Virus record (IMG/VR): IMGVR_UViG_3300009104_001827
Coordinates: 1-64,000 of that record
DNA: 64,000 bases
Reading direction: 5' to 3' (one strand)
Shown here: positions 2,935-27,784 of the stretch, piece after piece
Numbering within the stretch: the stretch's first letter is position 1
Layout of the letters: each line of letters begins with the position of its first letter
Notes under the pieces: generated by a model
What the model saw: only the letters and a program-made list of their open reading frames with translations
What the model was told of the DNA's origin: nothing
Databases searched by the model: none
Translations under genes and position numbers: made by a program

Positions 2935-3009
2935 ATGATTGAAAGCATACTAATAGCTGGGCTAATACTACTGTTTCCCATTATACTCTGCTCGCTGAGA
3001 CCTCACTAA
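2935..3009 (+). CDS. 24-aa hydrophobic peptide MIESILIAGLILLFPIILCSLRPH
   Basis: Hand-translated; its TAA stop is the first three bases of element R1. Confidence 0.5.
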   Translation: MIESILIAGLILLFPIILCSLRPH

Positions 3010-3083
3010 GCTACTGAGTAGCAAAGACTTACGAGCCGGCCGGCAGCCCCTGTATACGTAACTCGTTGGTACTCATGCCCTTA
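3007..3083 (+). repeat. Bipartite element R1 (arm, GC core, arm)
   Basis: Arm 3007-3031, 27-bp core CGAGCCGGCCGGCAGCCCCTGTATACG, arm 3059-3083. Confidence 0.85.
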
Positions 3084-3123
3084 GCATACGAGTATAGTGC
3101 AAAACATTAGTTGAATCTTAGCC

Positions 3124-3158
3124 TTGACAAATGGCTCTTTCTGTGGTATCTTATAGGT
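3124..3158 (+). promoter_or_regulatory. Sigma70-type leaderless promoter (representative of many)
   Basis: TTGACA-N17-TATCTT with extended TG, then 6 nt to ATG 3159; same 35-nt -35-to-ATG spacing at 4640, 4892, 5441, 5953, 6181, 6954, 7595. Confidence 0.85.
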
Positions 3159-3575
3159 ATGAATAACAATAAGAACATAAACCTAGATGTGTTGAAGATA
3201 GTACTGGATGCAACCACTCCAGCCAACCTTGCGAAGATAAATGTTTCGGGTGACTTCAATCTAGTACCAACGCCATTGACTCGTGACCAAGCCTGTGCAG
3301 CTAAGCGTATGCACGCACGCTGGCAAGCTCACACTACTGGCAACACCTATGTGCTTTATGTTCAGAACAGAACTTGCGACCATGCCTTTAGGGTAGTAGG
3401 TCACGGCAAGAACCCTTGGCAGGCTGTGCTACGCTACTACAAGGGTCTTGATAACAAGGGCAGTTGGATATGGCAATGCACTAAGGTGGTTGCAGTATAC
3501 TCTTGCGTATGTGACAAGTCCACTCAGGCAGGCGATCTGCTCGCTGGTCAAGCTCAAGACAGAGCTCCTTGGTAG
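3159..3575 (+). CDS. Hypothetical early protein
   Basis: Start re-assigned to the promoter-proximal ATG; stop lies inside the R2 arm. Confidence 0.75.
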   Translation: MNNNKNINLDVLKIVLDATTPANLAKINVSGDFNLVPTPLTRDQACAAKRMHARWQAHTTGNTYVLYVQNRTCDHAFRVVGHGKNPWQAVLRYYKGLDNKGSWIWQCTKVVAVYSCVCDKSTQAGDLLAGQAQDRAPW

Positions 3576-3640
3576 TCAAGGACTTACGCCACCGGCCCCC
3601 TCCGGGCGGGCCCCCTATGTCCTTGGTGCTCAGCAGGTTA
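3562..3640 (+). repeat. Bipartite element R2
   Basis: Arm 3562-3586, 29-bp GC core, arm 3616-3640. Confidence 0.8.
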
Positions 3641-3897
3641 CAGTTTTTTAACGAAAAATATCTCCCTAAGTACTTGATGCTCTGTTAGTTACGCATAAAA
3701 AAAAGTCGAGATGAGATTTTTTCCGCAATTACATAAAAAAAAGTTAAAAAAAAATGCATTTTCTTCTCGCTGATAATCAACAACTTAGGACAATAATCTT
3801 CTCTTTTGAAAAAAAAGCTCGTCTTTTCGTCAAATTCTGTCATAATGGGAACCATAGACAATCGAGAAAGACTTTAACCCAAAAACCAAAAAAAATT

Positions 3898-4131
3898 ATG
3901 CACGGCATTACAATACTAATTCACGAATTCAACTCCTTTGTTTCTGTCAAGATTCTAGATGGAGGCTTGTTTCCACGAGTCCGCACAACTGGACGCCTTG
4001 ACGGATTGTACAAGATTCTCAAAAATGAGCTTGCCCACTTCAAGGAAATGGGAATCGAAGTTTCCTTCGCTCGAAAGAACGCAGGAAAGTTTGGCGGTAT
4101 CAAATGGAAAGACATTGCGAAACTTCGCTAA
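3898..4131 (+). CDS. Hypothetical early protein
   Basis: MHGITILIHEF... within ORF 3754..4131. Confidence 0.6.
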   Translation: MHGITILIHEFNSFVSVKILDGGLFPRVRTTGRLDGLYKILKNELAHFKEMGIEVSFARKNAGKFGGIKWKDIAKLR

Positions 4132-4179
4132 AAAAACCCTTGACAAAAACCACTTTTTAGAATAAAATAATAGAATAAA

Positions 4180-4434
4180 ATGATAGAAATTACATACATC
4201 CTCCACAATCTAGATCGAGATGGCAATCGTTTAGACATTAAAAACCAACTCTTGCGAAAAGATATGTTTGAGAACGAGCAAGCTTGCTTTGATGCTTGGG
4301 CTTACTTAAAAGATCGAACAGAAGTTGAGATTCGCTCGACTAGAGAATTGACCCAAGAAGAGGTTGACCTTAAAGTCGCAACCGCTCGCAGAATTGCCTC
4401 CGATTATCGCCCCGGCGTTTATAACGGAGATTAA
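4180..4434 (+). CDS. Hypothetical early protein
   Basis: 84-aa ORF downstream of TTGACA at 4140. Confidence 0.75.
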   Translation: MIEITYILHNLDRDGNRLDIKNQLLRKDMFENEQACFDAWAYLKDRTEVEIRSTRELTQEEVDLKVATARRIASDYRPGVYNGD

Positions 4435-4442
4435 ACAAACTA

Positions 4443-4529
4443 ATGACTGATCTAATCATAATGTTGCTCGCCTTGCTTGTGGTCACCAATCTGTGGTGTT
4501 GCTTGGTTTGGCTGATATCGGGTTCCTAA
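4443..4529 (+). CDS. 28-aa hydrophobic peptide MTDLIIMLLALLVVTNLWCCLVWLISGS
   Basis: Hand-translated; its TAA stop is the first three bases of element R3. Confidence 0.5.
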   Translation: MTDLIIMLLALLVVTNLWCCLVWLISGS

Positions 4530-4603
4530 GCCCCTAATAACCAAAGACTTACGCGCCGGCGGCGTCCCCCCGTCTCCGTAAGTCCTTGAATGGCAATAGG
4601 TTA
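4527..4603 (+). repeat. Bipartite element R3
   Basis: Arm 4527-4551, 27-bp core, arm TAAGTCCTTGAATGGCAATAGGTTA 4579-4603. Confidence 0.85.
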
Positions 4604-4674
4604 CAGAGTAAAAAAAGTGAAAAAAAGTGAAAAAAAAACTTGACTTTCTCTGCTTTCTGTGCTATTGTATAGGT

Positions 4675-4854
4675 ATGATTAAGATTGAAAAAGACGATAT
4701 CGTTCTCGACCGTTTCGGCGGTTTGTTTGTTGTGCTTGGCACAATCCAAAGCGGAGAGCTTGCAGAAGTTCGCCGTTGGGGAAGTTCCCAAATCTTTCAC
4801 CTTGTCGTCGGCGACTTCGGCGACTCTCGTGGGCTTCGTAAAGTCGTGCAATAA
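4675..4854 (+). CDS. Small early protein (MIKIEKDDIVLDRFG...)
   Basis: Leaderless promoter at 4640; N-terminus resembles 5988..6161 (DVVVDRRG). Confidence 0.7.
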   Translation: MIKIEKDDIVLDRFGGLFVVLGTIQSGELAEVRRWGSSQIFHLVVGDFGDSRGLRKVVQ

Positions 4855-4926
4855 GGCACAAACAAAAGTAGAATAATGCAAAAGAAAAAGCTTGCAATTA
4901 TCGCAAAACTGGTTTAGTATATAGGT

Positions 4927-5202
4927 ATGATTAAGATAAAAAAAGACTTCTGGACACAGAAAAATGTCCCCATGATTCACTTTCGCCAAGCGAAAATCCA
5001 AATGACCCTTGCCAATGGCGATAAGCTTGGCACGGTTCAAACTTTGCCGTTCCAAAAGAACGCACCAAGCAAAGGGCAATGGTTCGCCAAGGTTTCTGAT
5101 GTTTGGGATGTCGCAGACATTTCTTTCCGTGATCTTGGCGTACAGTCTTGCGTTGCTCCAAAAGGTCACATCGCTTGGAATCTCGTAGGAAAGGGAGTTT
5201 AA
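4927..5202 (+). CDS. Hypothetical early protein
   Basis: 91-aa ORF, leaderless promoter at 4892. Confidence 0.75.
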   Translation: MIKIKKDFWTQKNVPMIHFRQAKIQMTLANGDKLGTVQTLPFQKNAPSKGQWFAKVSDVWDVADISFRDLGVQSCVAPKGHIAWNLVGKGV

Positions 5203-5648
5203 TGTTAAAAAGATTCTTTTTTCAAACTCTTTTACGAACTCGCTACTTTGTGGGCTTTTCAAAGGTGAAATACTTTTGGAGCTTAAAATCTGCCGAGGAC
5301 TTCGCAAGAAATTGCAAAGATCTTGGAAAAACAACTGTCTGGCGTAAAGATCACAAAAGAATGTTTACTCACAACAATCTTGTCGATTACTCACTCCACG
5401 AGGACGCAAAAAACTTTTCAACCTATCACTAAAAAAACGCTTGACAAAAACGCAAAAATCTGACAAAATAAAAGCATGATTAGAATAATTCAAAACCCAA
5501 ATCTCAAAAACTGGTTTTCTCTCATTAGTGGCGAAACGCTACTTGACCAAATCAAGGGAAAAGCTAACGCATTGAAAATCGCTCGCAAGATTGCAAGAGC
5601 CGAAGGCAAAATGATTTCCGAAGAGTTTAACGCAAACAAAAAATAGAA

Positions 5649-5846
5649 ATGTACATTCCACAAACTCCAGCACTAATTGATGCAAAAATTGCACAAAAGA
5701 AAAAAGCCCTTTCCGAGTGGAAGGAAAAACTGAATAAGTCACGCAAACAGTCGTTTCTTGTAGCTAGAGCCTTGCAGGTCAAAACGCTAGAAGAAGAACT
5801 GCAAACACTGCGAGCGGTTCGAGCGGTACGGCTCACAAGGTGCTAA
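5649..5846 (+). CDS. Basic coiled-coil small protein
   Basis: 65-aa ORF; stop lies inside the R4 arm. Confidence 0.65.
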   Translation: MYIPQTPALIDAKIAQKKKALSEWKEKLNKSRKQSFLVARALQVKTLEEELQTLRAVRAVRLTRC

Positions 5847-5912
5847 TAGTCAACGACTTACGCGCCGGCGGGCCCCCGGCGTTAGCGTAACTCATTGAAG
5901 ACCAAGGAGTTA
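5836..5912 (+). repeat. Bipartite element R4
   Basis: Arm 5836-5860, core CGCGCCGGCGGGCCCCCGGCGTTAGCG, arm 5888-5912. Confidence 0.9.
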
Positions 5913-5987
5913 ACGTGAGAGAATCGTGCAAAACATTAGTTGAAAGTTAGCCTTGACAAACAGGTGTTTCTGTGGTATAGTATAGGT

Positions 5988-6161
5988 ATGATTAAAAACA
6001 AAGATGTAGTAGTAGACCGCAGAGGTCGCATTTTTCAAGTTGTCGATGCAGACTTTAAGACTGACCGACTAGGCAAACAAATCCTTTGCCGTTTGTACCG
6101 TTCGCAAAAGCGTTTCGCTTTCATGCCTTGGCAGGTAAAAAAGCATCCGTTTTTCTCTTGA
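5988..6161 (+). CDS. Small early protein
   Basis: Leaderless ATG 35 nt after TTGACA at 5953. Confidence 0.7.
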   Translation: MIKNKDVVVDRRGRIFQVVDADFKTDRLGKQILCRLYRSQKRFAFMPWQVKKHPFFS

Positions 6162-6215
6162 AAATAATTGAAAAAAAAACTTGACTTTTCCTTAAAAATA
6201 GATTAAATTGTAGAT

Positions 6216-6515
6216 ATGAAAATTGAAAAAGACCTCTCTCACATCGCCGAAGCTGTCGCTTTGGCTAACGCCAACGGAAACAAAGTTTCCGACCAGTTCG
6301 CTGACTTGCTCGCCGACCTACAAGGTCAAAAGCTTGCCGAAGACTTTACGGTTGAGCATGGAACGCAACACGCTTCAGATGATGAAGTGAAAGCCGAGTT
6401 CGTTTCTCTCGATGCAGTTGAAAATGACAACGAAGACGACGATTTCGACAATGATGAAAACCTCGTTGACATGAGTCAAATCTCTGGCTCGATGCGTGAA
6501 ATCTTTGGAGAGTAA
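6216..6515 (+). CDS. Acidic early protein, paralog 2
   Basis: Shares QFADLLADLQGQKLAEDFTVEHGTQHASDDEVKAEFVSLDAVE with 2177..2482. Confidence 0.85.
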   Translation: MKIEKDLSHIAEAVALANANGNKVSDQFADLLADLQGQKLAEDFTVEHGTQHASDDEVKAEFVSLDAVENDNEDDDFDNDENLVDMSQISGSMREIFGE

Positions 6516-6522
6516 AAAAATT

Positions 6523-6858
6523 ATGAGAAAAGTCACAGAACAAATCAAGCAAGCCTTTGAGCAAGGCGAATCTAAAAAAGTCGGAAACACCGAGACGGAT
6601 GGAACAAGCGTTTTCTTGCATGGGAATGAAATTGTTCGCCGTGATGTGAGCGGTTTGGTCTTTGCTACGCTCGCAGGTTGGAACACTCCAACCACGAGAG
6701 AAAGAGTCAACGGAATCACAGGAATGGGCTTTCATCAGGTCAACCATCAGGCTTGCCTAAATGGTGAACCGATTGACTCATCCGACTGGTTCGTCAAGAC
6801 TGCTCAAGGTGATTCGCAAGCGTTGCCACCACCGCCTAAGTCACTGACTGTCAGCTAG
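6523..6858 (+). CDS. Hypothetical phage protein
   Basis: MRKVTEQIK...AGWNTPTTRERVNG; stop lies inside the R5 arm. Confidence 0.75.
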   Translation: MRKVTEQIKQAFEQGESKKVGNTETDGTSVFLHGNEIVRRDVSGLVFATLAGWNTPTTRERVNGITGMGFHQVNHQACLNGEPIDSSDWFVKTAQGDSQALPPPPKSLTVS

Positions 6859-6913
6859 TTACGGGCCGGCGGGCCCCCGGCGTTAGCGTAACTCATTGAA
6901 AACCAAGGAGTTA
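6837..6913 (+). repeat. Bipartite element R5
   Basis: Arm 6837-6861, core differing from R4 at one base, arm 6889-6913. Confidence 0.9.
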
Positions 6914-6988
6914 GCGCGAGAGAATTGTGCAAAACGTTAAGCGAATCTTAGCCTTGACAAAAGGGCTTTTCTGTGGTATTGTATAGGT

Positions 6989-7489
6989 ATGATTAAGAGA
7001 AAAACTAAAGCTTTCGTTTTTGACTTTGACGACACTCTTGCGTTCACCGATGCAAGAGTTCATGTGCTGAGTCGGTTCAAGAGTCAAGTGGTCGCAAGCT
7101 TGACCCCTAAACAGTTCAATGATGTAAAATTAAAGGAAGGCGAAAGCTTCGACTTCTCCGACTTCGACAGAGCGAGCTTCATTCGTGACGGCAAACCTTC
7201 TAAGCTGATTGACTTAGCAAAAGAAGTTTTTTCTGAAGGTCATTCTGTGTTTATCTTAACTGCTCGCAACGATTGCGTTTCTTCTGCGATTGCTGAATGG
7301 CTTACAGACTTTGGAATCGTTGCAAGGGAAGTTCATTGCGTGGGCGAAAAAGGCACGGACATTGCAAAAGCAAAAAGACAAGTCTTGCTTGCAATCATTG
7401 AAAACTTTGACAAGGTTTGGTTTTTCGATGATGATGCTCGAAACATTGAGCTTGCCCAAGAGCTAAACCTTAAAGCTAAAAAAGTGTAA
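6989..7489 (+). CDS. HAD-superfamily phosphatase-like protein
   Basis: FDFDDTL (motif I), ILTAR (II), K (III), FFDD (IV). Confidence 0.8.
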   Translation: MIKRKTKAFVFDFDDTLAFTDARVHVLSRFKSQVVASLTPKQFNDVKLKEGESFDFSDFDRASFIRDGKPSKLIDLAKEVFSEGHSVFILTARNDCVSSAIAEWLTDFGIVAREVHCVGEKGTDIAKAKRQVLLAIIENFDKVWFFDDDARNIELAQELNLKAKKV

Positions 7490-7874
7490 AAATTACCATG
7501 AATAAAACAAAACTTGCAAAGATAATGAAAGCCAAAGGCAAAAAGAATGTTTTCGCTAAACTGATAGAAATGCAAAAAAAGTTACAGAAAAGGCTTGACA
7601 AAAATCAGAAAAAAGACTAGTATAGAGGCATGATTAAACAAGAAATCGAAAGACTCGTTTCCGTTTTGCAGGCATTGACCTTGCAAAAGTTGGAAGCAAT
7701 TAGAAACGGCAAGCAAAGAGAAGCTTTGCAAATCCAATCGGTGCAGGTTGACATCGACAACAAAATCCAAGACCTAGAAAGGCAACTTTCTTAATGGAAA
7801 TTGGAATCATTTTACTCGTTACCTTTTGCCTCGCAGGCTTGAGGGAAGCAATAAGCCCAACACTGAAAAAATAA

Positions 7875-8138
7875 ATGAAACACTTTGAAATCTTAAAAGT
7901 CGGAGTTTCGCCAGAAAGGCGTTTCCTTCAAAAAACCATGAGCGGAGCAAATTGGACAAATCAGTGGCACGCTCACAAGTTTCTCAAGCTAGATGAAGCA
8001 AAGCAAGAGGCTGACAGTCACGAGAATGTTGTCATAATCTGGGTTGATGAATCAATCCACAGCGGAGCAAATTGGGGCGAAGTAAATCCCGATTGCTCGC
8101 CAGACTTCGCTCGCCAGAGAATCGTTTCAACTCAATAA
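7875..8138 (+). CDS. Hypothetical early protein
   Basis: 87-aa ORF with internally repeated SGANW. Confidence 0.7.
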   Translation: MKHFEILKVGVSPERRFLQKTMSGANWTNQWHAHKFLKLDEAKQEADSHENVVIIWVDESIHSGANWGEVNPDCSPDFARQRIVSTQ

Positions 8139-8147
8139 AATAAACTA

Positions 8148-8258
8148 ATGAGAGAATATAGAAATCTAATCATCTGCGGAATCTTATACTGCGCAGTCGC
8201 CACGCTAATGGTCGCAGGGTTTTACCTTGGTTGCCTTCTCAGCGTCGCAACTAACTGA
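8148..8258 (+). CDS. 36-aa hydrophobic peptide MREYRNLIICGILYCAVATLMVAGFYLGCLLSVATN
   Basis: Hand-translated; TGA lies inside the R6 arm. Confidence 0.5.
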   Translation: MREYRNLIICGILYCAVATLMVAGFYLGCLLSVATN

Positions 8259-8324
8259 TTGCCAAAGAGTTACGCTTGGCCGGGCTCCCCCCTAAGTCAT
8301 AAGTCGTTGATACTCATACTGTTA
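8248..8324 (+). repeat. Bipartite element R6
   Basis: Arm 8248-8272, 27-bp core, arm TAAGTCGTTGATACTCATACTGTTA 8300-8324. Confidence 0.85.
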
Positions 8325-8631
8325 TGACCCAGAATGATTCGAGATGAATATTTGACCCTATTTGGCTTCAAAAATCAAGTAATTTCTCTATTTCTATTTA
8401 ATTGATTATCAATAGTTTATAACTATTTTTATTCATTTGTAAAAAAGTGTTTGACTCAAAATGAGATTTAGTCTATTATAGTAGGCATAATGAAAAACGG
8501 AATAAGTCTCACCAAAAAGGAACTTCAAGAAATCATCGACCAAAATGTCGGTGACGCAAACGAGGGTTGTGTTCAGTCTCAACAGATTGTTGTCCACGCC
8601 CAATGGCTATTGGATAGGATTGCCAACCAAT

Positions 8632-8704
8632 GGGGATGATTGGATTCGATTTGCACTGCTTCATCGGGGCAAAGACTGCGGTTCAACTCCGCACATCTCC
8701 ACCA
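8632..8704 (+). ncRNA. Mini-tmRNA: tRNA-like domain only
   Basis: 5' GGGGAUGAUUGGAUUCGA; UUUGC/GCAAA helix; T-arm UGCGG-UUCAACU-CCGCA; acceptor GGGGAUG/CAUCUCC with G3.U70; ACCA end. Confidence 0.75.
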
Positions 8705-8717
8705 ATTTTTAAGAATT

Positions 8718-9038
8718 ATGAGTAAAAATAAAAACAAAAATATTGCACTAATCGACGAGAAATGGGAAGCAATTGGACATTCAATGAACATCTCAAACGA
8801 GGCTTGCTCAAGGTTATTCAATGAGGTTTTGATTCCGCTTTCTGGAATGCAAGGCAAATTGAAGTTTGCCACAGGCAAAAGTGTGGTCGATGAATCCGTT
8901 GACTGCATAGAAAACAAGTCAGTTCGCCGTACAGTTGCCGAAGTCAGAGACGGCATTTCAGGACTCCGTGAGATAGTCAAAGATATATCTCAAAGTCTCA
9001 GAGAGCAATCGGAAAAATACATTCGCGCAAATCCTTAA
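8718..9038 (+). CDS. Hypothetical protein (last + strand early gene)
   Basis: MSKNKNKNIAL...; stop lies inside the R7 arm. Confidence 0.7.
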   Translation: MSKNKNKNIALIDEKWEAIGHSMNISNEACSRLFNEVLIPLSGMQGKLKFATGKSVVDESVDCIENKSVRRTVAEVRDGISGLREIVKDISQSLREQSEKYIRANP

Positions 9039-9105
9039 GCATCAGCGACTTACGCTACAAGGGGGGACCCCGGCCCGTCGTAAGTCATTGACCTACAACG
9101 GGTAA
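9028..9105 (-). repeat. Bipartite element R7 (first inverted copy)
   Basis: Arm 9028-9052, 28-bp core with G-run on the + strand, arm 9081-9105. Confidence 0.85.
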
Positions 9106-9155
9106 CAGGCTAACCAATAATAAAACTATTTAGCTATTTAGTATTTACTATTTAG

Positions 9156-9380
9156 CTATTTAAGTTCCTCAATTAGCTCGTCTAATCGCTCATAGTCAAG
9201 CCCCGAATCATTCCAAGCAACTCTGTCTGGTGTTTCGGTAGACTCAAAGCAGTCTCGCATTTGACAAGCGAAGTCATGATAATTCTCGCACTCTCTTGCG
9301 AAATTGTAAAGACCTTCGTCATTGCCTATCCATAGGGCGACATTCCAAGTTGCGTGATTTTTCCATCCGTTATAACTCAT
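9156..9380 (-). CDS. Conserved-type small phage protein
   Basis: YNGWKNHATWNVALWIGNDEGLY motif. Confidence 0.75.
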   Translation of the reverse strand: MSYNGWKNHATWNVALWIGNDEGLYNFARECENYHDFACQMRDCFESTETPDRVAWNDSGLDYERLDELIEELK

Positions 9381-9694
9381 AATTTTGATATATCGTGTCC
9401 GTGTTGTTCCATGTTTCGCAATGCCTCTTGTCTGGTCATGTTAAAACGACTCATAAGATACATTAGAAGCGTTGCTCCTGTTAATTCTATTTCATTACTC
9501 ATTTACAAGTCCAATCGTATAAGGAGAGTGTTCTGTCGCTCTGTTCAAATCAGATTCCAAATCTCGAATAAGTTCAATAACTACTTGAAGCGTTCCTTCA
9601 AGACCGATTGACTTTCCGTTCTTCAAAACCTCGTAGTTTTTCACAGGATTGTTTGTTGATTGTCTAATCATTCCTTCTATTGTTGAATAGCTCA

Positions 9695-10060
9695 TTAGTC
9701 TGATAAAAGAGATTGGGTGTAATCGTTTCGGAGTTCATTGAGAAGGTCAACCCAAGCAACGCCATTCGTTTGAGCCTCACGCATTAGGCGAGTAATCGCA
9801 ACTTCATCTTGCCAACCGAGAACATCATCGAACTTAGCAAGCGGAAGCATCTTGTCGTTGTGGAACATTGCGACTTCGTAAGTTCCTTGCGATGCGTTGC
9901 CATAAAGCCCACCGAATTGCTTTTCTTTGTTCTTCATAGAGACAACGGAAATCTGAAATCCGTTTCCTAAATCAAGTCTAGCTTGGATTGCATCTGGATG
10001 GTTTGCGTGGTCGTTAAACTCCAAATCGGAGAAGGTTTTCGTCTTTTGTGTTTCAATCAT
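9695..10060 (-). CDS. Hypothetical phage protein
   Basis: 121 aa; TTGACA 35 nt upstream. Confidence 0.75.
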   Translation of the reverse strand: MIETQKTKTFSDLEFNDHANHPDAIQARLDLGNGFQISVVSMKNKEKQFGGLYGNASQGTYEVAMFHNDKMLPLAKFDDVLGWQDEVAITRLMREAQTNGVAWVDLLNELRNDYTQSLLSD

Positions 10061-10104
10061 AAATATATTCTGACAGATAATAGGGTTTTTGTCAAGGCTT
10101 TTTT

Positions 10105-10341
10105 TTATAAATCTTCCGTTAGGGCAAATATTCTTCCGTTGTAATCAACTTGGCTGGAAATGTTTGTAAAGGTTCTCTTTTCTAAATTGGCTCGCAAGCA
10201 ATCTTCGCTGATATAATACTCTCGCAACCAAGGCGTTTTCTTCTTCTTCTGTTCTTCCGCTTTTCTGTCCACCTCTGCAATGACTATCACGCCATCGTTT
10301 GAAAGTGAGAGTAAAAGGCTTTTGTCTCGTTTTAATTTCAT
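10105..10341 (-). CDS. Hypothetical protein
   Basis: 78 aa; TTGACA 35 nt upstream. Confidence 0.7.
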   Translation of the reverse strand: MKLKRDKSLLLSLSNDGVIVIAEVDRKAEEQKKKKTPWLREYYISEDCLRANLEKRTFTNISSQVDYNGRIFALTEDL

Positions 10342-10393
10342 CCCTTTATACTAGATTAATTAAGCCTTGATGTCAAGCTTTTTCTTTCGCTCG

Positions 10394-10470
10394 CAACATA
10401 CTGAAGCTCAACGACTTACGCTGACGCCGGGGGCCGGCCCAGCCCTAAGTCCTTGACTATCTGCCGTTTA
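10394..10470 (-). repeat. Bipartite element R8
   Basis: 27-bp core CGCTGACGCCGGGGGCCGGCCCAGCCC, close to the reverse complement of the R4/R5 core. Confidence 0.9.
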
Positions 10471-10620
10471 GGATTCTCAAGAGATGCTCGTAAGCTGGCA
10501 AGCCTGAGTTTAACCCATGAGCAACCCATTTTCCCTTTTCTTTACGGTAAAGCAAATCCCATTTGCAAGCGTAATCATGCACTCGCATTAGACCATTGGG
10601 CAAGATTTCAGTTCGGTATC

Positions 10621-11343
10621 TCAAGAGTTTATCCCTTCCTGTACGAATCCTGTCTCATCCTTTTTTGCCATACCCTTTTCGATAAGCCCGACAATAACGC
10701 CTTGCTTGTCACGGAAACGCAAATCACTTTCATCGCCATTGATAACTTCGTGACCTTTCCAAGTTTTAGGTAACCTATCACGGAAAACCACGGCGACATT
10801 TCCACCCATTTGCAAAACCATATCGCAAAGCGTATCGTTATGCTCTGAGCGAGAAAAAGTCAAATGATAGTTGCTCGGAAAATCCTTAGCTTGATTGACG
10901 AACTTTGCCATGCGTTGAAACGACTTGGTATAATCATAAAATTGCGTTTCGGGAAACTTTTGCATAAGCGTTTGACCATTTGCATCTTCAATGTTTTCCC
11001 ATTCCAAATCGCTTGTGAGATTAGGGCGAAAAACCGCAGTCATTTCTTTCTTAACTGCTGACTTAATGCCTGAAGCAATTTCCTTTGCGAGCTTTTCCAT
11101 GAACGCAAGCTTTTGTTCAAAGAATAACTTTGTCTTGGCAATGCGAGAGTCTTGGATTTTGTCCATTCGTCCACGACCAGCAGTATTCAAGCAAGCCATC
11201 GTGCAACCTTTGCTTCTCCATTGGCAAGCTTCGTACCCCGAAAGATTTGCTGGAGCAAGATGAATGCCCTTAGTCATGAAGCCAAAAGCTTCGCCTTTTA
11301 CGATTTTGGCATTTCCTGCCGTGAGTAGAGTTGTCTTAATCAT
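10621..11343 (-). CDS. GP88-like phage protein
   Basis: CxxxxxxCxxxCLNTAGRG, FYDYTK, YHLTFS and GDESDLRF motifs. Confidence 0.65.
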   Translation of the reverse strand: MIKTTLLTAGNAKIVKGEAFGFMTKGIHLAPANLSGYEACQWRSKGCTMACLNTAGRGRMDKIQDSRIAKTKLFFEQKLAFMEKLAKEIASGIKSAVKKEMTAVFRPNLTSDLEWENIEDANGQTLMQKFPETQFYDYTKSFQRMAKFVNQAKDFPSNYHLTFSRSEHNDTLCDMVLQMGGNVAVVFRDRLPKTWKGHEVINGDESDLRFRDKQGVIVGLIEKGMAKKDETGFVQEGINS

Positions 11344-11571
11344 GCCTTAATACTATCTTAATTCTGCTTTCTTGTCAACAATTTTCTTTGCTTTTTCAAT
11401 TCCTTTTTCCATGCCGAACTGAGAAACCAAGCGTTTGAAAGTTTCCCAAGCAATCGTATTCTCGGGAAGCTTTTTCCATTCTTTCATTCTTTCTTTACTA
11501 TTCATGCCTTAATTATGGCAGATTCTAGGGGCAAAGTCAAGCCTTTTTTTAAAATAAAATCAAAAGAAATC

Positions 11572-11649
11572 TAAACCCCTCTAGACCAAGGACTTACGGA
11601 CCGGCGGGGAGGCCGCCCGGGCCGTAACTCGTTGATACTCAGCTACCTA
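11572..11649 (-). repeat. Bipartite element R9
   Basis: Arm 11572-11596, 28-bp core, arm 11625-11649. Confidence 0.85.
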
Positions 11650-11728
11650 CAGCGTGCACATAAACGCACAGGCTAGTATAAGTAGCAAAGGCAACTGCTA
11701 TAAATATATATAATAGTCTATTTGTCAT
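11639..11728 (-). CDS. 29-aa hydrophobic peptide MTNRLLYIFIAVAFATYTSLCVYVHAVGS
   Basis: Stop lies inside the R9 arm. Confidence 0.5.
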   Translation of the reverse strand: MTNRLLYIFIAVAFATYTSLCVYVHAVGS

Positions 11729-12023
11729 CACATTGCTTGTTGAGCTTGACAACTTTAAGCACCTTCTTAAAGGCTTCTTGCACTCCGTCAAGAAACTCCT
11801 TGCTTCCCATTTCTGGATAAACATGGTTGATGTCGTTAGGATCGTAGACATTCAAGACATCTAAGATGACCTCGAAATCTTTTTTGTTTAGTGATGTATA
11901 CATAATTCTATAATTCTTCTACCCACCAATAGCCTTCGCACTTAGTGAGAATGGTATCAATTCCGTTTTGTTGCTTCATGTAGACAAATTGCCTCGCATG
12001 GTGTTCGTGAATAAACTTATACA

Positions 12024-12365
12024 TTAAAAGTCTGCTCCATAGGTTTCTTGCTCTCCAAAGCAACCGTAATCTTCGTCAGTCCCGAATCCTGCGGAAGTCA
12101 TGGCAGAATCAAAATCTCCATCCATACTTTCGTCGATATCTCTTTCGTCGTTGATGTGCCATTGCTCAACCTCTTCACAAGAAATCATCTTGCCGTGCCA
12201 ATCGTAAACGGCAAATTGGATTCCAAGATTAAGGTATTCGCCAGTTTGATTAGCCTCATCTATCAGGACTTCTGCTCGCATATAAGCTTGCTCAAGACCT
12301 TCACGATTTTTGTTCCAGAAATAGTCAAGCGTTTCATTTACAATTACTTCATATCTTTTTATCAT
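12024..12365 (-). CDS. Acidic hypothetical protein
   Basis: 113 aa, leaderless promoter, C-terminal SAGFGTDEDYG. Confidence 0.75.
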   Translation of the reverse strand: MIKRYEVIVNETLDYFWNKNREGLEQAYMRAEVLIDEANQTGEYLNLGIQFAVYDWHGKMISCEEVEQWHINDERDIDESMDGDFDSAMTSAGFGTDEDYGCFGEQETYGADF

Positions 12366-12420
12366 ACCTATAATACTATACTAGAATGGATTTCGTGTCA
12401 AGGGTTTTTTTAAAAAAAGT

Positions 12421-12512
12421 GTCCCGTGCTGTGCCACATGACTGCACCCAGATTTATGAAGGTTGCGAGCCTTCTGTCTTGAGGGGTTTATGTCTCAAGT
12501 CTGACACGGGAC
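12421..12512 (-). ncRNA. Candidate small structured RNA
   Basis: Closing stem GTCCCGTG/CACGGGAC with internal hairpins; own promoter at 12565-12570 ends in TATAGGTATA (no ATG); U-tract follows. Confidence 0.5.
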
Positions 12513-12660
12513 TGAAATTGTGTTAAAATAATTATACCTATAAGTATGACAGAATGAGCCGTGAAGTCAAGCTTTTTTTTCATTTTTTATGTCGATGCTT
12601 TGCTGTTTTGTAAACACGTTTCTCAAATGTGTCGATGAGATAAACATAAGTTTGGTGTTG

Positions 12661-12737
12661 CAAGTCCCTAATACCCAACGACTTACGCTGAAGCGGGGAG
12701 CCGGCCCCGTCATAAGTCATTGATAGTCAACGACAAA
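12661..12737 (-). repeat. Bipartite element R10
   Basis: Arm 12661-12685, 27-bp core, arm 12713-12737. Confidence 0.85.
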
Positions 12738-12819
12738 AAAAACTCCCCTCGATCCTTATATTTGACCGAGGGAAGTTTCTTATTTAAGAGCTGTATTTGA
12801 CCCCTTTTCGTTTCAATTT

Positions 12820-13626
12820 CTAGTTGGATTCAACTCCTGCAACAGGGTCAAAAGCATTATGGAAAATCTCAGAACGCTTAGGCAAGTGCATTACATTGCG
12901 TCCTTTGGACACTTCCGTGAACGCATTGTATAGCGAATTAAGATTGCGGTCTTGAAAGACCTTGTGGTCAGAATCTTTCCATTGCTCCCAAGCTTGAGCT
13001 AGGGTGGATTGACCAATTAAGTTGGTCTTGATTCCTGCCTCGTAGACATCGAAGATGAGGTGTTGAGCTTGCCTATCATTCAAAGGAATATCCCTATAAG
13101 CTTCGACTCGCTTATCTTGATGCTCCCACATGGGCAATAAAGCCTTGACAATATCATCCACTCTCTTGAGTAGCTCTTGCTTTACTTCGCCTATGTGCTT
13201 GCGAGTAAAGACGACATCGTTATGAAAAACGAGATTGTCACAAATAAATGGTGCTTCACCTGCACACAATCCTGCTGCGAAAAGCTTATCGTGCGAGTTA
13301 CGCATACCGACAACTGTTCCTCTATCCGAACCAACACGATTTGGATGAACAACTTGAAACATTCCGAAATAATGGTCGGCTTGCTTACCAAGATTGTGGC
13401 ATTCATTTACGATTTCAAAACCCGATTCTTCAAGGTTGTTGCGAGTTACATCGACAACAGTTGCGTGAGGAATTGGTTTCCAACGATTAGTTTCCTTGGG
13501 AGTCGGAACACGACGAACGGTATCCAAATCCACAACGGAACTTTTTGCTCCACAAATGCGGAGGTTCAACTTAGGAGTTTCTGCTATTGTATCTGTCATA
13601 ATTTTTTGAGTTTCTATTTTTATCAA
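12820..13626 (-). CDS. DUF932-like phage protein
   Basis: NSHD, ICDNL, RKH and LYNAFTE motifs typical of the family. Confidence 0.7.
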   Translation of the reverse strand: MIKIETQKIMTDTIAETPKLNLRICGAKSSVVDLDTVRRVPTPKETNRWKPIPHATVVDVTRNNLEESGFEIVNECHNLGKQADHYFGMFQVVHPNRVGSDRGTVVGMRNSHDKLFAAGLCAGEAPFICDNLVFHNDVVFTRKHIGEVKQELLKRVDDIVKALLPMWEHQDKRVEAYRDIPLNDRQAQHLIFDVYEAGIKTNLIGQSTLAQAWEQWKDSDHKVFQDRNLNSLYNAFTEVSKGRNVMHLPKRSEIFHNAFDPVAGVESN

Positions 13627-13671
13627 TTGTTAAGCTATAAGTATAGGTGAAAATATGTTAAAAGTCAAGCA

Positions 13672-13914
13672 TTAATTTTGCTCAAATGGCTTTTTTTCTT
13701 GCCCATTGAATCCAGTCATGTTCTCGTAGCATTGAGCCTTTTGGGCAATTTGCTGAAGGGTAATTCCAACCATGCCAATAGTCTCACTTTCCTCATCACT
13801 TAGCTCACCTTCTACTGGCTTAATGCAAATCTCCCATAGCACATCCATGCACATCTTCATGATGTTCTCTGCGTTCAAGTTTTCGTCCGAGGCTTCGTTA
13901 TTCAATATATTCAT
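13672..13914 (-). CDS. Hypothetical protein
   Basis: 80-aa ORF. Confidence 0.65.
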   Translation of the reverse strand: MNILNNEASDENLNAENIMKMCMDVLWEICIKPVEGELSDEESETIGMVGITLQQIAQKAQCYENMTGFNGQEKKPFEQN

Positions 13915-14016
13915 TTTTTCTTCAATCCTTTCTCAATTATCAATACAAGTATTCTAGAGGAAAACTAGGGTAATTGCAAGCATAAAATCACTAAAACTAA
14001 CATTTTTTTTAATGCT

Positions 14017-14090
14017 TATGTTGCTCTAGGTCAATAACTTACGACGGGCCCGGGGGCCCGCCAGCTAAAGTGAATTGATTGAGAGCCAAG
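14017..14090. repeat. Degenerate bipartite element R11
   Basis: Arm ending TCAATAACTTA, core CGACGGGCCCGGGGGCCCGCC, second arm decayed. Confidence 0.65.
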
Positions 14091-15703
14091 TCGCCACACT
14101 TGGTGAAGCTTTCAAGGGTTAACCTACTAGGCGTAGTACTGCCTCTCAAAATCAATAGATAGATAATTAAGCGAAGATCCGCTTCTCTAGTTTATACAGC
14201 TGCTCAAGTAGATTGTCGTGCTCCTTTTTCTTCAAAGCCCAATCCTGACAATATGCTCCTGACTCCTCAGCCAATGCCAGCTCATAACCGAGCTGGCGAA
14301 TCTTGGCTAAGAGAGTATAGTGCCGTGCCATAATTAGCTTACGACTGTTACCAACCTATCGTAGCGAAACCTACGATAACCTTCACGGTTGTGGCAATAT
14401 GCCGTGAATCCGACAATGTTCTGACCTTCATTGGCATTGCCAAATTGGTCTTCTTGTACTGGCTTATCGACAGTATACAGTTCCGTTCTTCCGTCGGAAG
14501 TCTTGTATACGACTTGCCATCGTGTTGCGTTCTTGTTATTCTTCATTTTCTTTTCCAGTTTCATATTCGTTTATATCTTTTTTAGATTCTTGTTCTTTGG
14601 TTTCGTAAAGTTCTAATGATTGCTTGAGAGTTGCTTGGGCTTCTTCCAAAGTGTCAAATGGAATACAAATCAATTCTTGCTCCAAATTATATGGGCAATA
14701 CTCTTGCTTCTCAGCAAAATATAAATCCCATGTTCCAGTATCGTCATCGTATTCTGGGCGATTAAGTGGTGGAAGTTCACAGTATTCTTGAATATAATTA
14801 AGCATTGCGATTAAACTCTTGAGCCTTTCTGACTTTTTGCGTCACCATTACATTTGGGTCGTACAAGGATTCAACGAGAGGTTTGTTTCCCGTGTGAGAA
14901 TACTTCTTGCACATATCGTGAAGTTGTTTGTGTTTTACTGGGTCTGAAACGCCCTTTTGTTTTGCTTCCTTACTCATTAAAATAATCCTACTACTCCGTA
15001 TTCAACCTCGACTTGCTCAAGAAAATTATCTGCACAAGTTTCAACTGCGTTTTCATAAGCAACGCCATCTATGTCATCGCTTTCGTTAAAATAATCAAAG
15101 AAGGGAAAATCCGCAAGGTCGTGAACGCTTATGCCAAGCTTCATCATAACCTTTGAATCTACATCTTCAACGAACTGTTCTATCGTGTTTTTAATCATGC
15201 TATAATTATCGCACATTTTCGTTTCTTTGTCAAGGGTTAAATTAATCTTTGCTTGCATCCATCCAAGCCCGATTGTAAACCTCTTCGGGATGATGAAAAT
15301 ACCTATCGGAATCATTTGTCTTTTTATCTTCAGCAAAGCAATCAACAACGATTTGGCAAAGGTCATCAATGTTGTCGTTTGTAATTTCGTACTCTCTATC
15401 CAGTAAAGGGTTCATGTACGCAATGATGTTCTCTTGGATTTGTTCTTTTATCTCTTCGTTTGTCATAAAACTTTTGCACCCACTTTGTAAACCGACCAAT
15501 TTCCATTACAATAAGGATAAGAACCTTCTGCCCAACTTACTGCACCATCAATGGAGCGAAAATAAATCGGTGATTCGGAAGGACTATCATCGTCAACGAG
15601 TGCGTATACTCCTTCTGCTATGTCGCAAGGTTCAGTCATCCTTTCTCGCTCAAACTGAGACTTAATTTCCATGTAATCATGTCCGTCTATGCAATAATTC
15701 ATC

Positions 15704-16114
15704 TTACCACCAAGAGTTGTAGTAAACCTTCTTGCCATCTGCGATTGCCTTGCGAGCATCTTGAATGAACTTCAAGTCAGTCAACTTGTAATGGTAGTCA
15801 TTATCACCATAAGGATTTCCATCGGCATCTTCCCAAGCAAATGAATCGTCTCCGAAGAAAAACCCACCTGTTTCTGGCAATGCCTTGTTCGCTACATGAG
15901 CCTCAAGTTGTTCTAGGTCTGACTCGCTGAGTTCAAGCTCAACGCAATTAAAATCGTTGCCAATTCCACTATCGGAATCACTAACGGCATTTCCCTTGTC
16001 TCGAAACAAGTCTTCCATCCATCCGTGAAGACGATTGTGCTTACGCCAGTAAGCGAGTTCTTCTTGCTCTGAATCCTCAGAGGTCTTTGCGTATCCGTAT
16101 TGGTCTAATCCCAT
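15704..16114 (-). CDS. Conserved-type phage protein
   Basis: MGLDQY...YWRKHNRLHGWM...GFFFG...YYNSWW. Confidence 0.75.
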   Translation of the reverse strand: MGLDQYGYAKTSEDSEQEELAYWRKHNRLHGWMEDLFRDKGNAVSDSDSGIGNDFNCVELELSESDLEQLEAHVANKALPETGGFFFGDDSFAWEDADGNPYGDNDYHYKLTDLKFIQDARKAIADGKKVYYNSWW

Positions 16115-16187
16115 TTTTTATCTTTCTCTTTCTCGATTGTTAAGCCTTAATTTTGACAGAAAAATGCCCTAAAGTCAAGCTTTTTTT

Positions 16188-16598
16188 TTAGATTGCAAGA
16201 ACTTCTTTTGTATAAAACTTCACGAACGAAGCGAACCATCTTGGTTTTTGCGTACTCACATCAACAAAAGATGAATGCTTGTAAGGATTGTATGTGATAG
16301 CAGTCATTTCCCACCATCCTATGTCATCCCAGCACGCAAATGAAGGATCAGGATGAGCGATGTATCCGCTGATGCCTGCATGGACATTTTTCCTTTTCTC
16401 CCGAAGAACCCTTTCTCTCCCTTTCGTGTTCACCTTCATCATTGCTGAATATAAATGTATTGGTTTTCCGTCAGAATGAGCCTTAACGAGACCGTCTTGC
16501 TTGATGCTCCAACAATCCTTGTGGAGATTCTTATAGACAAAAACCTTTTTGCTTTCATCCAGTTTATACCTTGGGTCTTCTTGTTTTAATTTAATCAT
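16188..16598 (-). CDS. Conserved-type phage protein
   Basis: VYKNLH...REKRKNVHA...YNPYK; leaderless promoter. Confidence 0.75.
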   Translation of the reverse strand: MIKLKQEDPRYKLDESKKVFVYKNLHKDCWSIKQDGLVKAHSDGKPIHLYSAMMKVNTKGRERVLREKRKNVHAGISGYIAHPDPSFACWDDIGWWEMTAITYNPYKHSSFVDVSTQKPRWFASFVKFYTKEVLAI

Positions 16599-16651
16599 AC
16601 CTTTAATACTAGACTACTTTCATGGGCGTGTCAAGCTTTTTTTTACACCCG

Positions 16652-16729
16652 TAAACCACTGCTCCCCAAAGAGTTACGCATAAAGGGGGAGGCCGGCGCC
16701 GTCGTAAGTCGTTGATGTTAAGTTGCTTG
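16652..16729 (-). repeat. Bipartite element R12
   Basis: Arm 16652-16676, 28-bp core, arm starting TAAGTCGTTGATG 16705-16729. Confidence 0.85.
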
Positions 16730-16887
16730 GGCGATCTCCTTAAGTGAAATTATTTTTATCATTATTTATATTTGAATGATTCACATTTGTATTTGTATAT
16801 TTATTCATACCATTCTTGTATAGCAATTTTTATTCCGAAGCATATTCCAATCAATATAATTATGCCTAATTCCAATTTTATCCTTTC

Positions 16888-27686: not shown

Positions 27687-27784
27687 GATGATAATAAGTC
27701 TTGAGGAAAAAGGCTTGAAAGTCAAGCTTTTTTTTTACAAGACTCGTAAGTTTCTCATTAATAATTAGTTATGACGCAAAAAGT

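What the first reader, a model, noticed from the sequence alone, without database searches (positions are those of the whole stretch)
3007..16729. Twelve bipartite IHF-like palindrome / GC-core elements partition the early region into cassettes
Seen: elements start at 3007, 3562, 4527, 5836, 6837, 8248, 9028, 10394, 11572, 12661, 14017 (degenerate) and 16652. Each is a 25-bp imperfect palindrome (consensus TAAGTCRTTGAT-N-NTCAACGACTTA), a 27-29 bp very GC-rich core (GCCGG...CCCCC), and a second 25-bp palindrome. Arm centres are 52-54 bp apart, about 5 helical turns, and the half-sites facing the core are best conserved. No complete copy was seen beyond 16.7 kb. Established: each half matches the IHF consensus WATCAANNNNTTR, and repeated promoter/stem-loop (PeSL) elements mediate module shuffling in some T4-type phages. 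Inference: these are phased nucleoprotein sites used for cassette recombination, for organising or pulling in first-injected DNA, or for insulating very strong promoters.
Basis: partly seen in the sequence, partly recalled or inferred. Interest (0 to 1): 0.8.

Follow-up and report, generated by a model that had tools for sequence, protein, structure and literature searches.

The report
Paired IHF-like palindromes upstream of promoters
The twelve repeats are real and belong to a widespread, apparently undescribed family of about 85-bp DNA elements in uncultured phages: two symmetric sites that look like binding sites for a DNA-bending protein, separated by a usually GC-rich spacer and placed just upstream of strong early promoters at the borders of small gene cassettes.

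Summary
A profile search finds 11 full elements, one half element at the listed starts, four further partial copies at 1.9-3.8 kb, and nothing beyond 16.7 kb. Each element is four 13-nt half-sites (CGTAAGTCnTTGA, arranged -> <- spacer -> <-). The same architecture occurs in at least 50 IMG/VR viral contigs and 58 MAG contigs (marine, lake, groundwater), but in no isolate genome scanned.

It is not an RNA hairpin or a terminator. Variable positions are not compensated, and the cores fold no better than shuffled cores. Canonical terminators sit immediately upstream of several copies.

The information peaks of the half-sites (CAA-N4-TTA) coincide with the IHF consensus. The two halves put AA/TT steps 9 bp apart, the IHF kink spacing. 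So each palindrome reads as one symmetric IHF/HU-type site.

Elements flank an outward sigma70-type promoter on one side only, at distances that step by about 11 bp. Half elements keep the promoter-proximal palindrome.

My best reading is a protein-bound architectural or boundary module of early promoters that also serves as a recombination substrate. The binder is unproven. No recombinase, transposase or HU/IHF gene was found nearby. Cassette shuffling occurs, but its breakpoints fall at promoters as often as at elements.

The parts
3007..3093 (+). full element; promoter 3124-3152 follows
   Evidence: 46 bits
3562..3646 (+). full element; the stop codon of the 3159-3575 ORF lies in its first half-site
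   Evidence: 41 bits
4527..4610 (+). full element; promoter 4640-4668 follows
   Evidence: 55 bits
5836..5920 (+). full element; promoter 5953-5981 and a leaderless ATG at 5988 follow; core, right arm and promoter are duplicated at 6850-7003
6837..6921 (+). full element; promoter 6954-6982 and ATG at 6989 follow
8248..8332 (+). full element; the nearest strong promoter is 119 bp away (8451-8479); an RNA-library contig spans it whole
9028..9112 (-). full element at the point where the + block (2.2-9.0 kb) and the - block (9.2 kb onward) converge
10394..10478 (-). full element; promoter 10376-10348 and ATG at 10341 follow on the - strand
11572..11656 (-). full element; promoter 11540-11512 and ATG at 11505 follow on the - strand
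12661..12744 (-). full element, directly preceded in the sense direction by a hairpin plus T8 terminator at 12775-12735
14017..14062 (-). half element: the promoter-proximal palindrome and core are kept, the distal palindrome is degenerate; the orthologous junction in L065 (3530-3611) is also a half element
16652..16736 (-). full element, the last copy; promoter 16634-16606 and ATG at 16598 follow
1924..1965 (+). half element (C/G-run core plus one palindrome) in the divergent region 1.8-2.15 kb
   Evidence: E 1e-5
2090..2114 (+). lone palindrome about 75 bp upstream of the inferred leaderless start at 2177
   Evidence: E 0.008
3663..3693 (.). weak lone palindrome just after element 3562
   Evidence: E 0.18
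3767..3791 (.). lone palindrome
   Evidence: E 0.03

Best explanation
Each element is a double-stranded DNA site for a protein, not an RNA structure. Each 29-bp palindrome (13-3-13) is one dyad-symmetric site of the IHF/HU kind. It carries the IHF consensus core (CAA-N4-TTA) on both halves, so a dimer would kink the DNA at the two AA/TT steps 9 bp apart and fold it into a U-turn. Two such sites, 48-55 bp apart, are held apart by a usually GC-rich spacer that resists melting and gives such proteins little to bind.

The module sits between the end of one early transcription unit (stop codon, sometimes a real terminator) and the A-tract and -35 of the next strong sigma70-type promoter, on a fixed face of the helix. 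I infer that it builds a bent nucleoprotein structure. That structure would set up or boost the early promoter and shield it from read-through and supercoiling coming from the unit upstream. The shielding matters here because the genes are leaderless and can only be translated from their own promoter's transcript.

Because the module is repeated, it is also, like the repeated promoters, a substrate for homologous exchange that reshuffles cassettes.

Shown: anatomy, distribution, absence of RNA-type constraint, linkage and polarity relative to promoters.
Inferred: that a protein binds, that it is IHF/HU-like and host-encoded, and the effect on transcription.
For: (1) No structural covariation. 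75.2% of cells pair, against 72.2-73.5% after column shuffling. At the variable N position 66-77 of 120 copies are unpaired. This holds both for the two-hairpin reading and for the long-hairpin reading.
(2) Core hairpin energy equals that of shuffled cores (mean z -0.16; 6.7% of cores reach p<=0.05).
(3) In the outer half-sites, which were not used for ascertainment, information peaks at CAA (1.0-1.8 bits) and TTA (1.2-1.8 bits) with N4 between. Across all four half-site classes, inner ones included, 93 of 466 half-sites match WATCAANNNNTTR exactly and 227 match within 1 mismatch.
(4) IHF kinks DNA at two sites 9 bp apart, with WATCAR between the kinks and TTR in the flank (10.1101/382655). 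In TTGA-NNN-TCAA the TT and AA steps are 9 bp apart, so the dyad of the palindrome coincides with that of the protein. This follows directly from the sequence.
(5) Promoter linkage. 41 of 117 copies have a >=10/12 sigma70-type promoter within 70 bp pointing outward on one side, and none has one on both sides. Outward promoters number 51 against 12 inward.
(6) The distance from the proximal palindrome centre to the -35 clusters at 19-22, 30-33, 42-45, 53-55, 60-66 and 74-78. The best period is 11 bp (vector strength 0.53, p 5e-4 for all 42 values; 0.49, p 0.06 for distinct values only).
(7) Polarity. Half elements keep the core and the promoter-proximal palindrome (window 14017; L065 3530-3611; L113 ~3296-3378). 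The distal outer half-site is often a CTAA variant.
(8) Real terminators lie just upstream of elements, so termination is provided separately.
(9) Half-site sequence is conserved between genomes (arm identity 0.65). Core identity between genomes is 0.62, against 0.72 within a genome; no random baseline was computed for it.
(10) The family is in many phage contigs and in a cellular MAG, but no HU/IHF gene is encoded in about 1.2 Mb of loci. This points to a host factor.
(11) The literature states that IHF pins plectonemes and can divide DNA into topological domains (PMC9519438, listed).
Against: - No binding data exist.
- Positions outside the IHF consensus are also conserved (G-A-C inside the N4, and CG after TTA). 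The binder may therefore be something with longer specificity.
- Only 4 of the 48 window half-sites match the full consensus.
- Known IHF sites are asymmetric.
- The host is unknown. That it is a proteobacterium is inferred only from the promoters and from a one-piece tmRNA.
- Spacing between the two palindromes differs by up to 0.7 helical turn between phages, so no single three-dimensional geometry is conserved.
- The 11-bp phasing is only borderline once related copies are collapsed (p 0.06).
- Strong promoters beyond 17 kb have no element, so the element is not needed for promoter function as such.
Confidence: 0.45

Rival explanations
1. The palindromes are operators for a phage-encoded dimeric or tetrameric regulator. 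One example would be an early-to-middle switch protein that shuts down or activates all early promoters at once. The resemblance to IHF sites would then be coincidental.
For: Conservation extends beyond the IHF consensus positions. Four half-sites would suit a dimer of dimers. The elements are restricted to the early region. Cores carry a shared k-mer, CGCCCCGC, in 17 of 51 loci against 3.1 in shuffles, which could be a second recognition element. The window holds an AbrB/MazE-like ORF that I did not localise, and neighbouring loci encode sigma-factor-like proteins.
Against: No protein family is shared by all element-bearing loci; the best are GP88-like in about 23 and DUF932 in about 17 of 50, and neither is a known DNA binder. 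The palindrome centres lie 55-110 bp upstream of the start site, which is not where repressors act. A member of the family occurs in a cellular MAG that carries EF-Tu and archease.
Confidence: 0.17
2. The elements are selfish, MITE-, REPIN- or BIME-like repeats that spread by a transposase (for example a HUH/Y1 enzyme acting on hairpins). They survive in intergenic DNA because they do little harm there.
For: The architecture (two palindromic units in inverted orientation around a spacer) resembles REP doublets. Cores are more alike within a genome (0.72) than between genomes (0.62). In MAG DeMMO4_10 a ~150-bp version with outer inverted repeats ends at least 14 contigs, which means many near-identical copies. 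The half-site contains TCAA and TTAC, the two cleavage tetranucleotides of IS608 (recalled from memory; a lead, not a test).
Against: There are no target-site duplications at any offset. There is no compensatory change of the kind hairpin recognition would impose. No transposase or recombinase appears among 117 window ORFs and 122 recurrent neighbour families. Position, and even the half-element state, is conserved at an orthologous junction between phages that share only 40-75% protein identity. Side, polarity and helical phase relative to promoters are fixed.
Confidence: 0.15
3. The elements act as RNA. The transcript folds into a long hairpin that terminates transcription, is cut by RNase III (as between T7 early genes), or protects the upstream mRNA from 3' exonucleases.
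For: Single copies fold to -15 to -34 kcal/mol as RNA. Canonical terminators are not enriched in 1-20 kb (21 found against 16.6 expected). The elements follow stop codons. Two contigs from an RNA library end at element edges (5809 and 6840).
Against: Pairing is explained by half-site conservation alone, with no covariation. The core folds no better than shuffled sequence. No U-tract follows the hairpin. Canonical terminators lie directly upstream of several elements. One RNA-library contig spans element 8248 whole. Contig ends at repeats are expected from assembly alone. Sequence-level conservation of stems across distant phages is not what a purely structural RNA signal shows.
Confidence: 0.1
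4. The elements are sites of a site-specific recombination system (att-like: a core crossover region flanked by bending sites) that moves or inverts cassettes.
For: A population variant joins the left arm of element 5836 to the right arm of element 3007 across a different core (depth 18.8). The 5849-6002 / 6850-7003 duplication starts at the edge of the core and leaves the left arm out. Cores are more alike within genomes. Bending sites on either side of a core recall lambda attP (from memory). One gene (9156-9380) keeps its element at its 3' end while lying on the other strand in L021.
Against: No integrase, invertase or resolvase was found. Cores within this genome are similar but not identical, so no common crossover sequence exists. 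Other joints lie in promoters and gene starts (4647->5966 and 4691->6215). About half of the order differences against L065 have no element at the breakpoint. All of this fits ordinary homologous exchange between short repeats.
Confidence: 0.1

Closest known systems
PeSLs (promoter-early stem-loops) of T4-type phages (PMC2839356, PMC4122927)
   Same: Both are repeated composite regulatory sequences in intergenic DNA of variable early regions. Both sit next to near-consensus sigma70 promoters, flank small ORFs of unknown function, and are associated with insertions, deletions and swaps between relatives.
   Different: A PeSL is a promoter plus a terminator-like G(n)-loop-C(n) stem-loop. Here the repeated part is four conserved 13-nt half-sites around a spacer that shows no excess hairpin potential, and true terminators are separate. 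The phage has rIIA/rIIB but no close cultured relative.
IHF-stimulated phage early promoters (lambda pL, Mu Pe; from my own knowledge)
   Same: A DNA-bending site lies several turns upstream of a strong early sigma70 promoter, and its helical face matters.
   Different: Those promoters have one asymmetric IHF site. Here there are two dyad-symmetric sites with the consensus on both halves, repeated at a dozen promoters, and binding is untested.
BIME / RIP (RIB) elements of E. coli: REP palindromes with an IHF site (from my own knowledge)
   Same: Both are interspersed extragenic mosaics of palindromic units plus an IHF-type site at the ends of transcription units. Roles proposed for BIMEs are topological insulation and mRNA stabilisation.
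   Different: The arrangement is inverted. In RIPs, GC-rich REP palindromes flank a central IHF site. Here IHF-like palindromes flank a central GC-rich spacer. There is no sequence similarity, no REP-type hairpin constraint and no RAYT gene.
Stoperators of mycobacteriophage L5 (from my own knowledge)
   Same: Both are many copies of one protein-binding site in short intergenic gaps, with a fixed orientation relative to transcription.
   Different: Stoperators are single asymmetric 13-bp sites for the phage repressor and act in lysogeny. No repressor is known here, and the sites are palindromic pairs.
MITEs such as Correia elements of Neisseria (from my own knowledge)
   Same: Similar size (about 85-150 bp), inverted-repeat ends and an IHF-type site. 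Both are intergenic and can carry or adjoin promoters. A high-copy ~150-bp version exists in one MAG.
   Different: There is no target-site duplication. Positions are conserved between distant relatives.

Membership tests
PeSL (T4-type promoter-early stem-loop) | an adjacent near-consensus sigma70 early promoter | tested here: met
   A promoter lies 18-38 bp from the element end at 9 of the 12 window copies. Across the family, 41 of 117 copies have an outward promoter on one side only.
PeSL (T4-type promoter-early stem-loop) | a terminator-like stem-loop (G-run, loop, C-run) as the repeated partner of the promoter | tested here: not met
   Core folding energy equals that of shuffled cores. There is no T-run. 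Separate canonical terminators lie upstream.
PeSL (T4-type promoter-early stem-loop) | located in hyperplastic regions and associated with indels or swaps between relatives | tested here: inconclusive
   Cassette order differs from L065/L021, and population joints exist. Only about half of the breakpoints carry an element.
IHF binding site | match to WATCAR-N4-TTR | tested here: inconclusive
   Window: 4 of 48 exact, 22 of 48 within 1 mismatch. Family: 93 of 466 exact, 227 within 1 mismatch, and the information peaks fall on CAA and TTA.
IHF binding site | geometry: consensus between and beside two kinks 9 bp apart | tested here: met
   The TT and AA steps of TTGA-NNN-TCAA are 9 bp apart and TTA follows after N4 on both sides. 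The kink spacing is taken from 10.1101/382655. This tests sequence geometry only.
IHF binding site | binding and bending by IHF | not testable with these tools
   Needs EMSA or footprinting.
Intrinsic (Rho-independent) terminator | a GC-rich hairpin followed directly by a T-run | tested here: not met
   The scan lists no element core. The core is followed by CGTAAGTC.
Structured RNA / RNase III site | base pairs kept by compensatory changes | tested here: not met
   75.2% paired against 72-73.5% in shuffles, and the N position is unpaired in 66-77 of 120 copies. No Rfam family matches.
REP / REPIN / BIME | palindromic units recognised as hairpins, with a cognate RAYT (Y1 transposase) | tested here: not met
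   There is no hairpin constraint. No Y1 transposase family appears among the window ORFs or the neighbour families. The rest of the genomes was not seen.
MITE | terminal inverted repeats plus a target-site duplication | tested here: not met
   The outer half-sites are inverted repeats, but no duplication of 2-9 bp is found at any offset in 117 copies.
Integron attC / att site | an adjacent integrase, promoterless cassettes in one orientation, and conserved core sites | tested here: not met
   No integrase was found. Cassettes have their own promoters and lie on both strands.

The most novel reading that the evidence does not exclude
The elements are the sites of a dedicated cassette-exchange system of phages, a phage counterpart of the integron. 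Host IHF/HU folds the two palindromes around the core, and a so far unrecognised phage enzyme crosses over in the core. This would let anti-defence and host-takeover genes, each with its own leaderless promoter, be swapped between co-infecting phages. That would explain genome-specific cores, mosaic joints at the core edges, and the spread of one half-site across marine, lake and groundwater phages.
Probability: 0.1. Interest if true: 0.85.

Novelty: new variant of a known kind. Interest (0 to 1): 0.62.

Why it matters
If a host bending protein does bind here, this is a conserved and easily recognised 'address label' of the early, anti-defence-rich region in a large clade of phages that has no cultured member. 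The neighbours include DUF932, GP88-like, ArdC-like and sigma-like genes. The element can be used to find such regions and their promoters in metagenomes. It offers a compact natural promoter-insulator module. It also gives a concrete, testable case of how phages keep a dozen very strong, closely packed, leaderless transcription units from interfering with each other while still allowing them to be reshuffled.

Tried and rejected
- Near and distant BLAST of the region, and of one element, against GenBank phages found no relative and no copy. BLAST cannot see two 13-nt arms split by a variable core, so cultured phages are not excluded.
- tblastn with rIIA, the clamp loader and the GP88-like protein gave only distant hits or none.
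- Rfam has no family for the elements.
- Core G/C skew against flanking purine skew, or against promoter side, shows no general polarity. In the window all 12 cores read GCCGGC..CCCCC on the sense strand, but this can be common descent of element-plus-promoter units.
- RNA evidence is weak. Only assembled contigs of one marine metatranscriptome were available. Contig ends at repeats are uninformative, and one contig spans element 8248.
- A phmmer search with E. coli IhfA against all ORFs of the window and of 178 loci found nothing.
- Clustering of neighbouring ORFs found no universal family.
- The target-site duplication test was negative.
- I compared the palindrome with the Fis, CRP and Fur consensus sequences from memory. 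None fits; a Fur-box-like centre appears only when the variable 3-nt centre happens to be TAA or ATA.

Full report
WHAT IS THERE

The window is part of a phage genome with 39.6% G+C. It carries rIIA (23059-25383), rIIB, an ATP-dependent ligase, a clamp-loader-like gene, four tRNAs and a tmRNA, all on the - strand. It has no near relative among GenBank phages. It comes from IMG/VR contig IMGVR_UViG_3300007515_000003 (98.8 kb). Marine sequencing runs hold it.

Genes run leftward at 0.2-1.8 kb, rightward at 2.2-9.0 kb, and leftward from 9.2 kb to the end of the window.

All twelve listed positions carry the element. A sequence profile built from 120 copies, 108 of them from other contigs, gives the following in the window:
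- 11 full matches, E 1e-9 to 3e-16
- a half match at 14017-14062
- a second half element at 1924-1965
- lone palindromes at 2090-2114, 3663-3693 and 3767-3791
- nothing convincing beyond 16.73 kb

ANATOMY

The unit is a 13-nt half-site, consensus CGTAAGTCnTTGA. Two half-sites face each other across 3 nt to give a 29-bp palindrome. Two such palindromes flank a spacer of 17-26 nt (23-26 in the window). Palindrome centres are 52-55 bp apart in the window. Elsewhere they cluster at 48, 50, 52-53 and 55 bp.

The spacer is at least 80% G+C in the window and in most relatives. In the close relative L065 and in several MAG copies it is AT-rich or mixed. G+C richness is therefore frequent but not defining.

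Spacers are not random. The 8-mer CGCCCCGC, or its complement, occurs in 17 of 51 loci against 3.1 in shuffles. Spacers are also more alike within a genome (0.72) than between genomes (0.62). The arms are conserved between genomes (0.65 ungapped).

A FAMILY, NOT A PECULIARITY OF THIS PHAGE

At least 50 of these carry the full four-half-site architecture with a GC-rich spacer: 108 copies, up to 7 per 10 kb.

A stricter pattern, with about 6 chance hits expected, found 58 stretches in the species-representative genome collection. All 58 are MAG contigs with wildly different taxonomic labels, from seawater, lakes and groundwater. None is in an isolate genome.

In one MAG (DeMMO4_10; its contigs carry EF-Tu and archease) a ~150-bp version with an AT-rich spacer and extra outer inverted repeats ends at least 14 contigs.

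I found no description of the motif in the searchable literature and no Rfam family.

DNA OR RNA?

I counted pairs on the 120-copy alignment for two readings: two separate hairpins, and one long hairpin. In both, 75.2% of cells pair, but 72.2-73.5% still pair after shuffling columns. At the freely varying N position, 66-77 of 120 copies are unpaired. At the C/G position of GASTTAC, changes are mostly uncompensated.

The spacers fold no better than their own shuffles (mean z -0.16).

The elements are not followed by a T-run, and the terminator scan does not pick them up.

In the relatives L065, L021 and L113, a textbook hairpin-plus-T8 terminator lies directly upstream of the element that precedes the gp82-like gene. 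The order there is gene, terminator, element, promoter, ATG. The window has the same arrangement at 12775-12735 before element 12661. L057, L070, L086 and L098 have it as well: 7 of 42 promoter-oriented copies in the sense direction, against 1 in the antisense direction.

The palindromy therefore reflects a repeated recognition sequence in duplex DNA. The element is not the terminator.

WHAT THE HALF-SITE LOOKS LIKE

In the outer half-sites, which were not used to find copies, information is highest at CAA and at TTA four bases further on. It is moderate at the A of GAC and low elsewhere. These peaks are the core positions of the IHF consensus WATCAR-N4-TTR.

Across all four half-site classes in the family, 20% of 466 half-sites match the full consensus and 49% match within one mismatch. 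In the window the figures are 4 and 22 of 48.

IHF kinks DNA at two steps 9 bp apart, with WATCAR between the kinks and TTR in the flank (10.1101/382655). In TTGA-NNN-TCAA the TT and AA steps are exactly 9 bp apart. Each 29-bp palindrome is thus what an IHF site would look like if both halves carried the consensus, which is the expected site of a symmetric IHF/HU-type dimer.

Three facts argue for caution. G-A-C and the terminal CG are also conserved. No HU/IHF gene occurs in the window or in about 1.2 Mb of fetched loci. The host is unknown.

RELATION TO PROMOTERS

The first 17 kb hold many near-consensus sigma70-type promoters (79 found against 41.6 expected in 1-20 kb). In the window the element end lies 18-38 bp from a -35 at nine copies, always on the downstream side in the direction of transcription.

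Across the family:
- 41 of 117 copies have a >=10/12 promoter within 70 bp pointing outward on one side.
- None has one on both sides.
- Outward promoters outnumber inward ones 51 to 12.

The distance from the proximal palindrome centre to the -35 falls in clusters about 11 bp apart. The vector strength is 0.53 (p 5e-4) for all 42 values. It is 0.49 (p 0.06) when each distance is counted once, so the phasing is suggestive rather than proven.

Half elements always keep the spacer and the promoter-proximal palindrome. The distal outer half-site is often a CTAA variant.

Promoters beyond 17 kb lack elements.

CASSETTES AND RECOMBINATION

The elements do separate units of one to six small genes. 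Compared with L065 (40-75% protein identity):
- The blocks 14798-14167 and 13672-12820 are collinear, with an element, in both genomes a half element, at the same junction.
- The gp82-like gene (16188-16598), the 9695-10060 gene and the rightward block are placed differently.
- Three of about five or six breakpoints carry an element. The others carry only a promoter.

Contigs of a second run show a variant in which the left arm of element 5836 is joined to the right arm of element 3007 across a different spacer. They also show joints from promoter to promoter (4647->5966) and from gene start to gene start (4691->6215).

The 154-nt duplication 5849-6002 / 6850-7003 comprises spacer, right arm, promoter and start codon, but not the left arm.

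No recombinase or transposase family was found among 117 window ORFs or 122 recurrent neighbour families. There are no target-site duplications.

Shuffling is therefore real. It looks like ordinary exchange between any of the repeated regulatory sequences, as proposed for PeSLs, and not like a dedicated system.

VERDICT

The elements are IHF-like, phased, DNA-level nucleoprotein sites at cassette borders, and they are not terminators. The recombination role is secondary at best, and the injection role is untested.

My best explanation (confidence 0.45) is a bent, protein-bound architectural or boundary module of early promoters.

The rivals are:
- an operator for a phage regulator (0.17)
- a selfish MITE/REPIN-like repeat (0.15)
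- an RNA hairpin signal (0.10)
- an att-like recombination site (0.10)

It is closest in context to PeSLs and in composition to BIME/RIP elements, but it fails defining features of both. I file it as a new variant of a known kind.

Noticed in passing
window 3124-16598, e.g. 5953-5990, 6954-6991, 10376-10339, 16634-16596: Twelve strong sigma70-type promoters have their -10 hexamer ending exactly 6 nt (10 cases) or 7 nt (2 cases) before an ATG that opens a 50-240 aa ORF, mostly ATGATTAAR. These early genes should therefore be transcribed as leaderless mRNAs. Five more promoters at 32-51 kb have 8-9 nt. Relatives (L065, L067, L114) share the design.
   Followed up: partly
window 8632-8704 (+): A 73-nt 'mini-tmRNA': acceptor stem, T arm and CCA end of tmRNA, with 10 nt in place of the ~310-nt middle part (Rfam RF00023, 47.9-56.5 bits, gathering score 47). 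It lies inside or at the start of the 8640-9038 ORF. A full-length tmRNA is at 55016-55391 (-). It could be a decoy for SmpB or alanyl-tRNA synthetase, or a remnant.
   Followed up: partly
loci L126, L132, L135-L172 (MAG 'bacterium DeMMO4_10'): A ~150-bp repeat with outer inverted repeats and the same four half-sites around an AT-rich 27-nt spacer ends at least 14 contigs of a groundwater MAG that also carries EF-Tu and archease genes. The family therefore also exists as a high-copy repeat in what looks like a cellular genome.
   Followed up: partly
window 2176-2403 and 6215-6442; 5849-6002 and 6850-7003: Paralogous cassettes: two acidic small proteins at 85% DNA identity, and a duplicated spacer + right arm + promoter + start codon at 86%.
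   Followed up: no
window 10621-11343, 12820-13626, 16188-16598; loci L024, L065, L101 and others: GP88-like (PF17338), DUF932 and L5-gp82-like genes recur next to the elements in several subgroups (about 23, 17 and 11 of 50 loci). ArdC-like, HNH, ERCC4, PhoH and sigma70-region-2 proteins also occur. This looks like an early anti-defence or host-takeover island.
   Followed up: partly
window 166-549, 16888-17481, 26907-27725 and unlocalised ORFs: An Hsp20, two Ogg/HhH-glycosylase-like ORFs, dCMP and dCTP deaminase-like, dUTPase and nucleoside deoxyribosyltransferase-like ORFs. Together these hint at altered nucleotide metabolism or DNA modification. An AbrB/MazE-like ORF (E 6e-5) was not localised.
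   Followed up: no
element half-sites throughout, e.g. window 3573-3575, 5844-5846: Each half-site holds TAA and TGA in different frames. With the usual spacing of 50 or 53 bp, an element would carry stop codons in all three frames on both strands. This frame coverage is reasoned by hand from the half-site consensus and was not computed. The last ORFs before elements 3562, 5836, 6837, 9028 and 11572 run 10-21 nt into the element, so they end in its first half-site.
   Followed up: no
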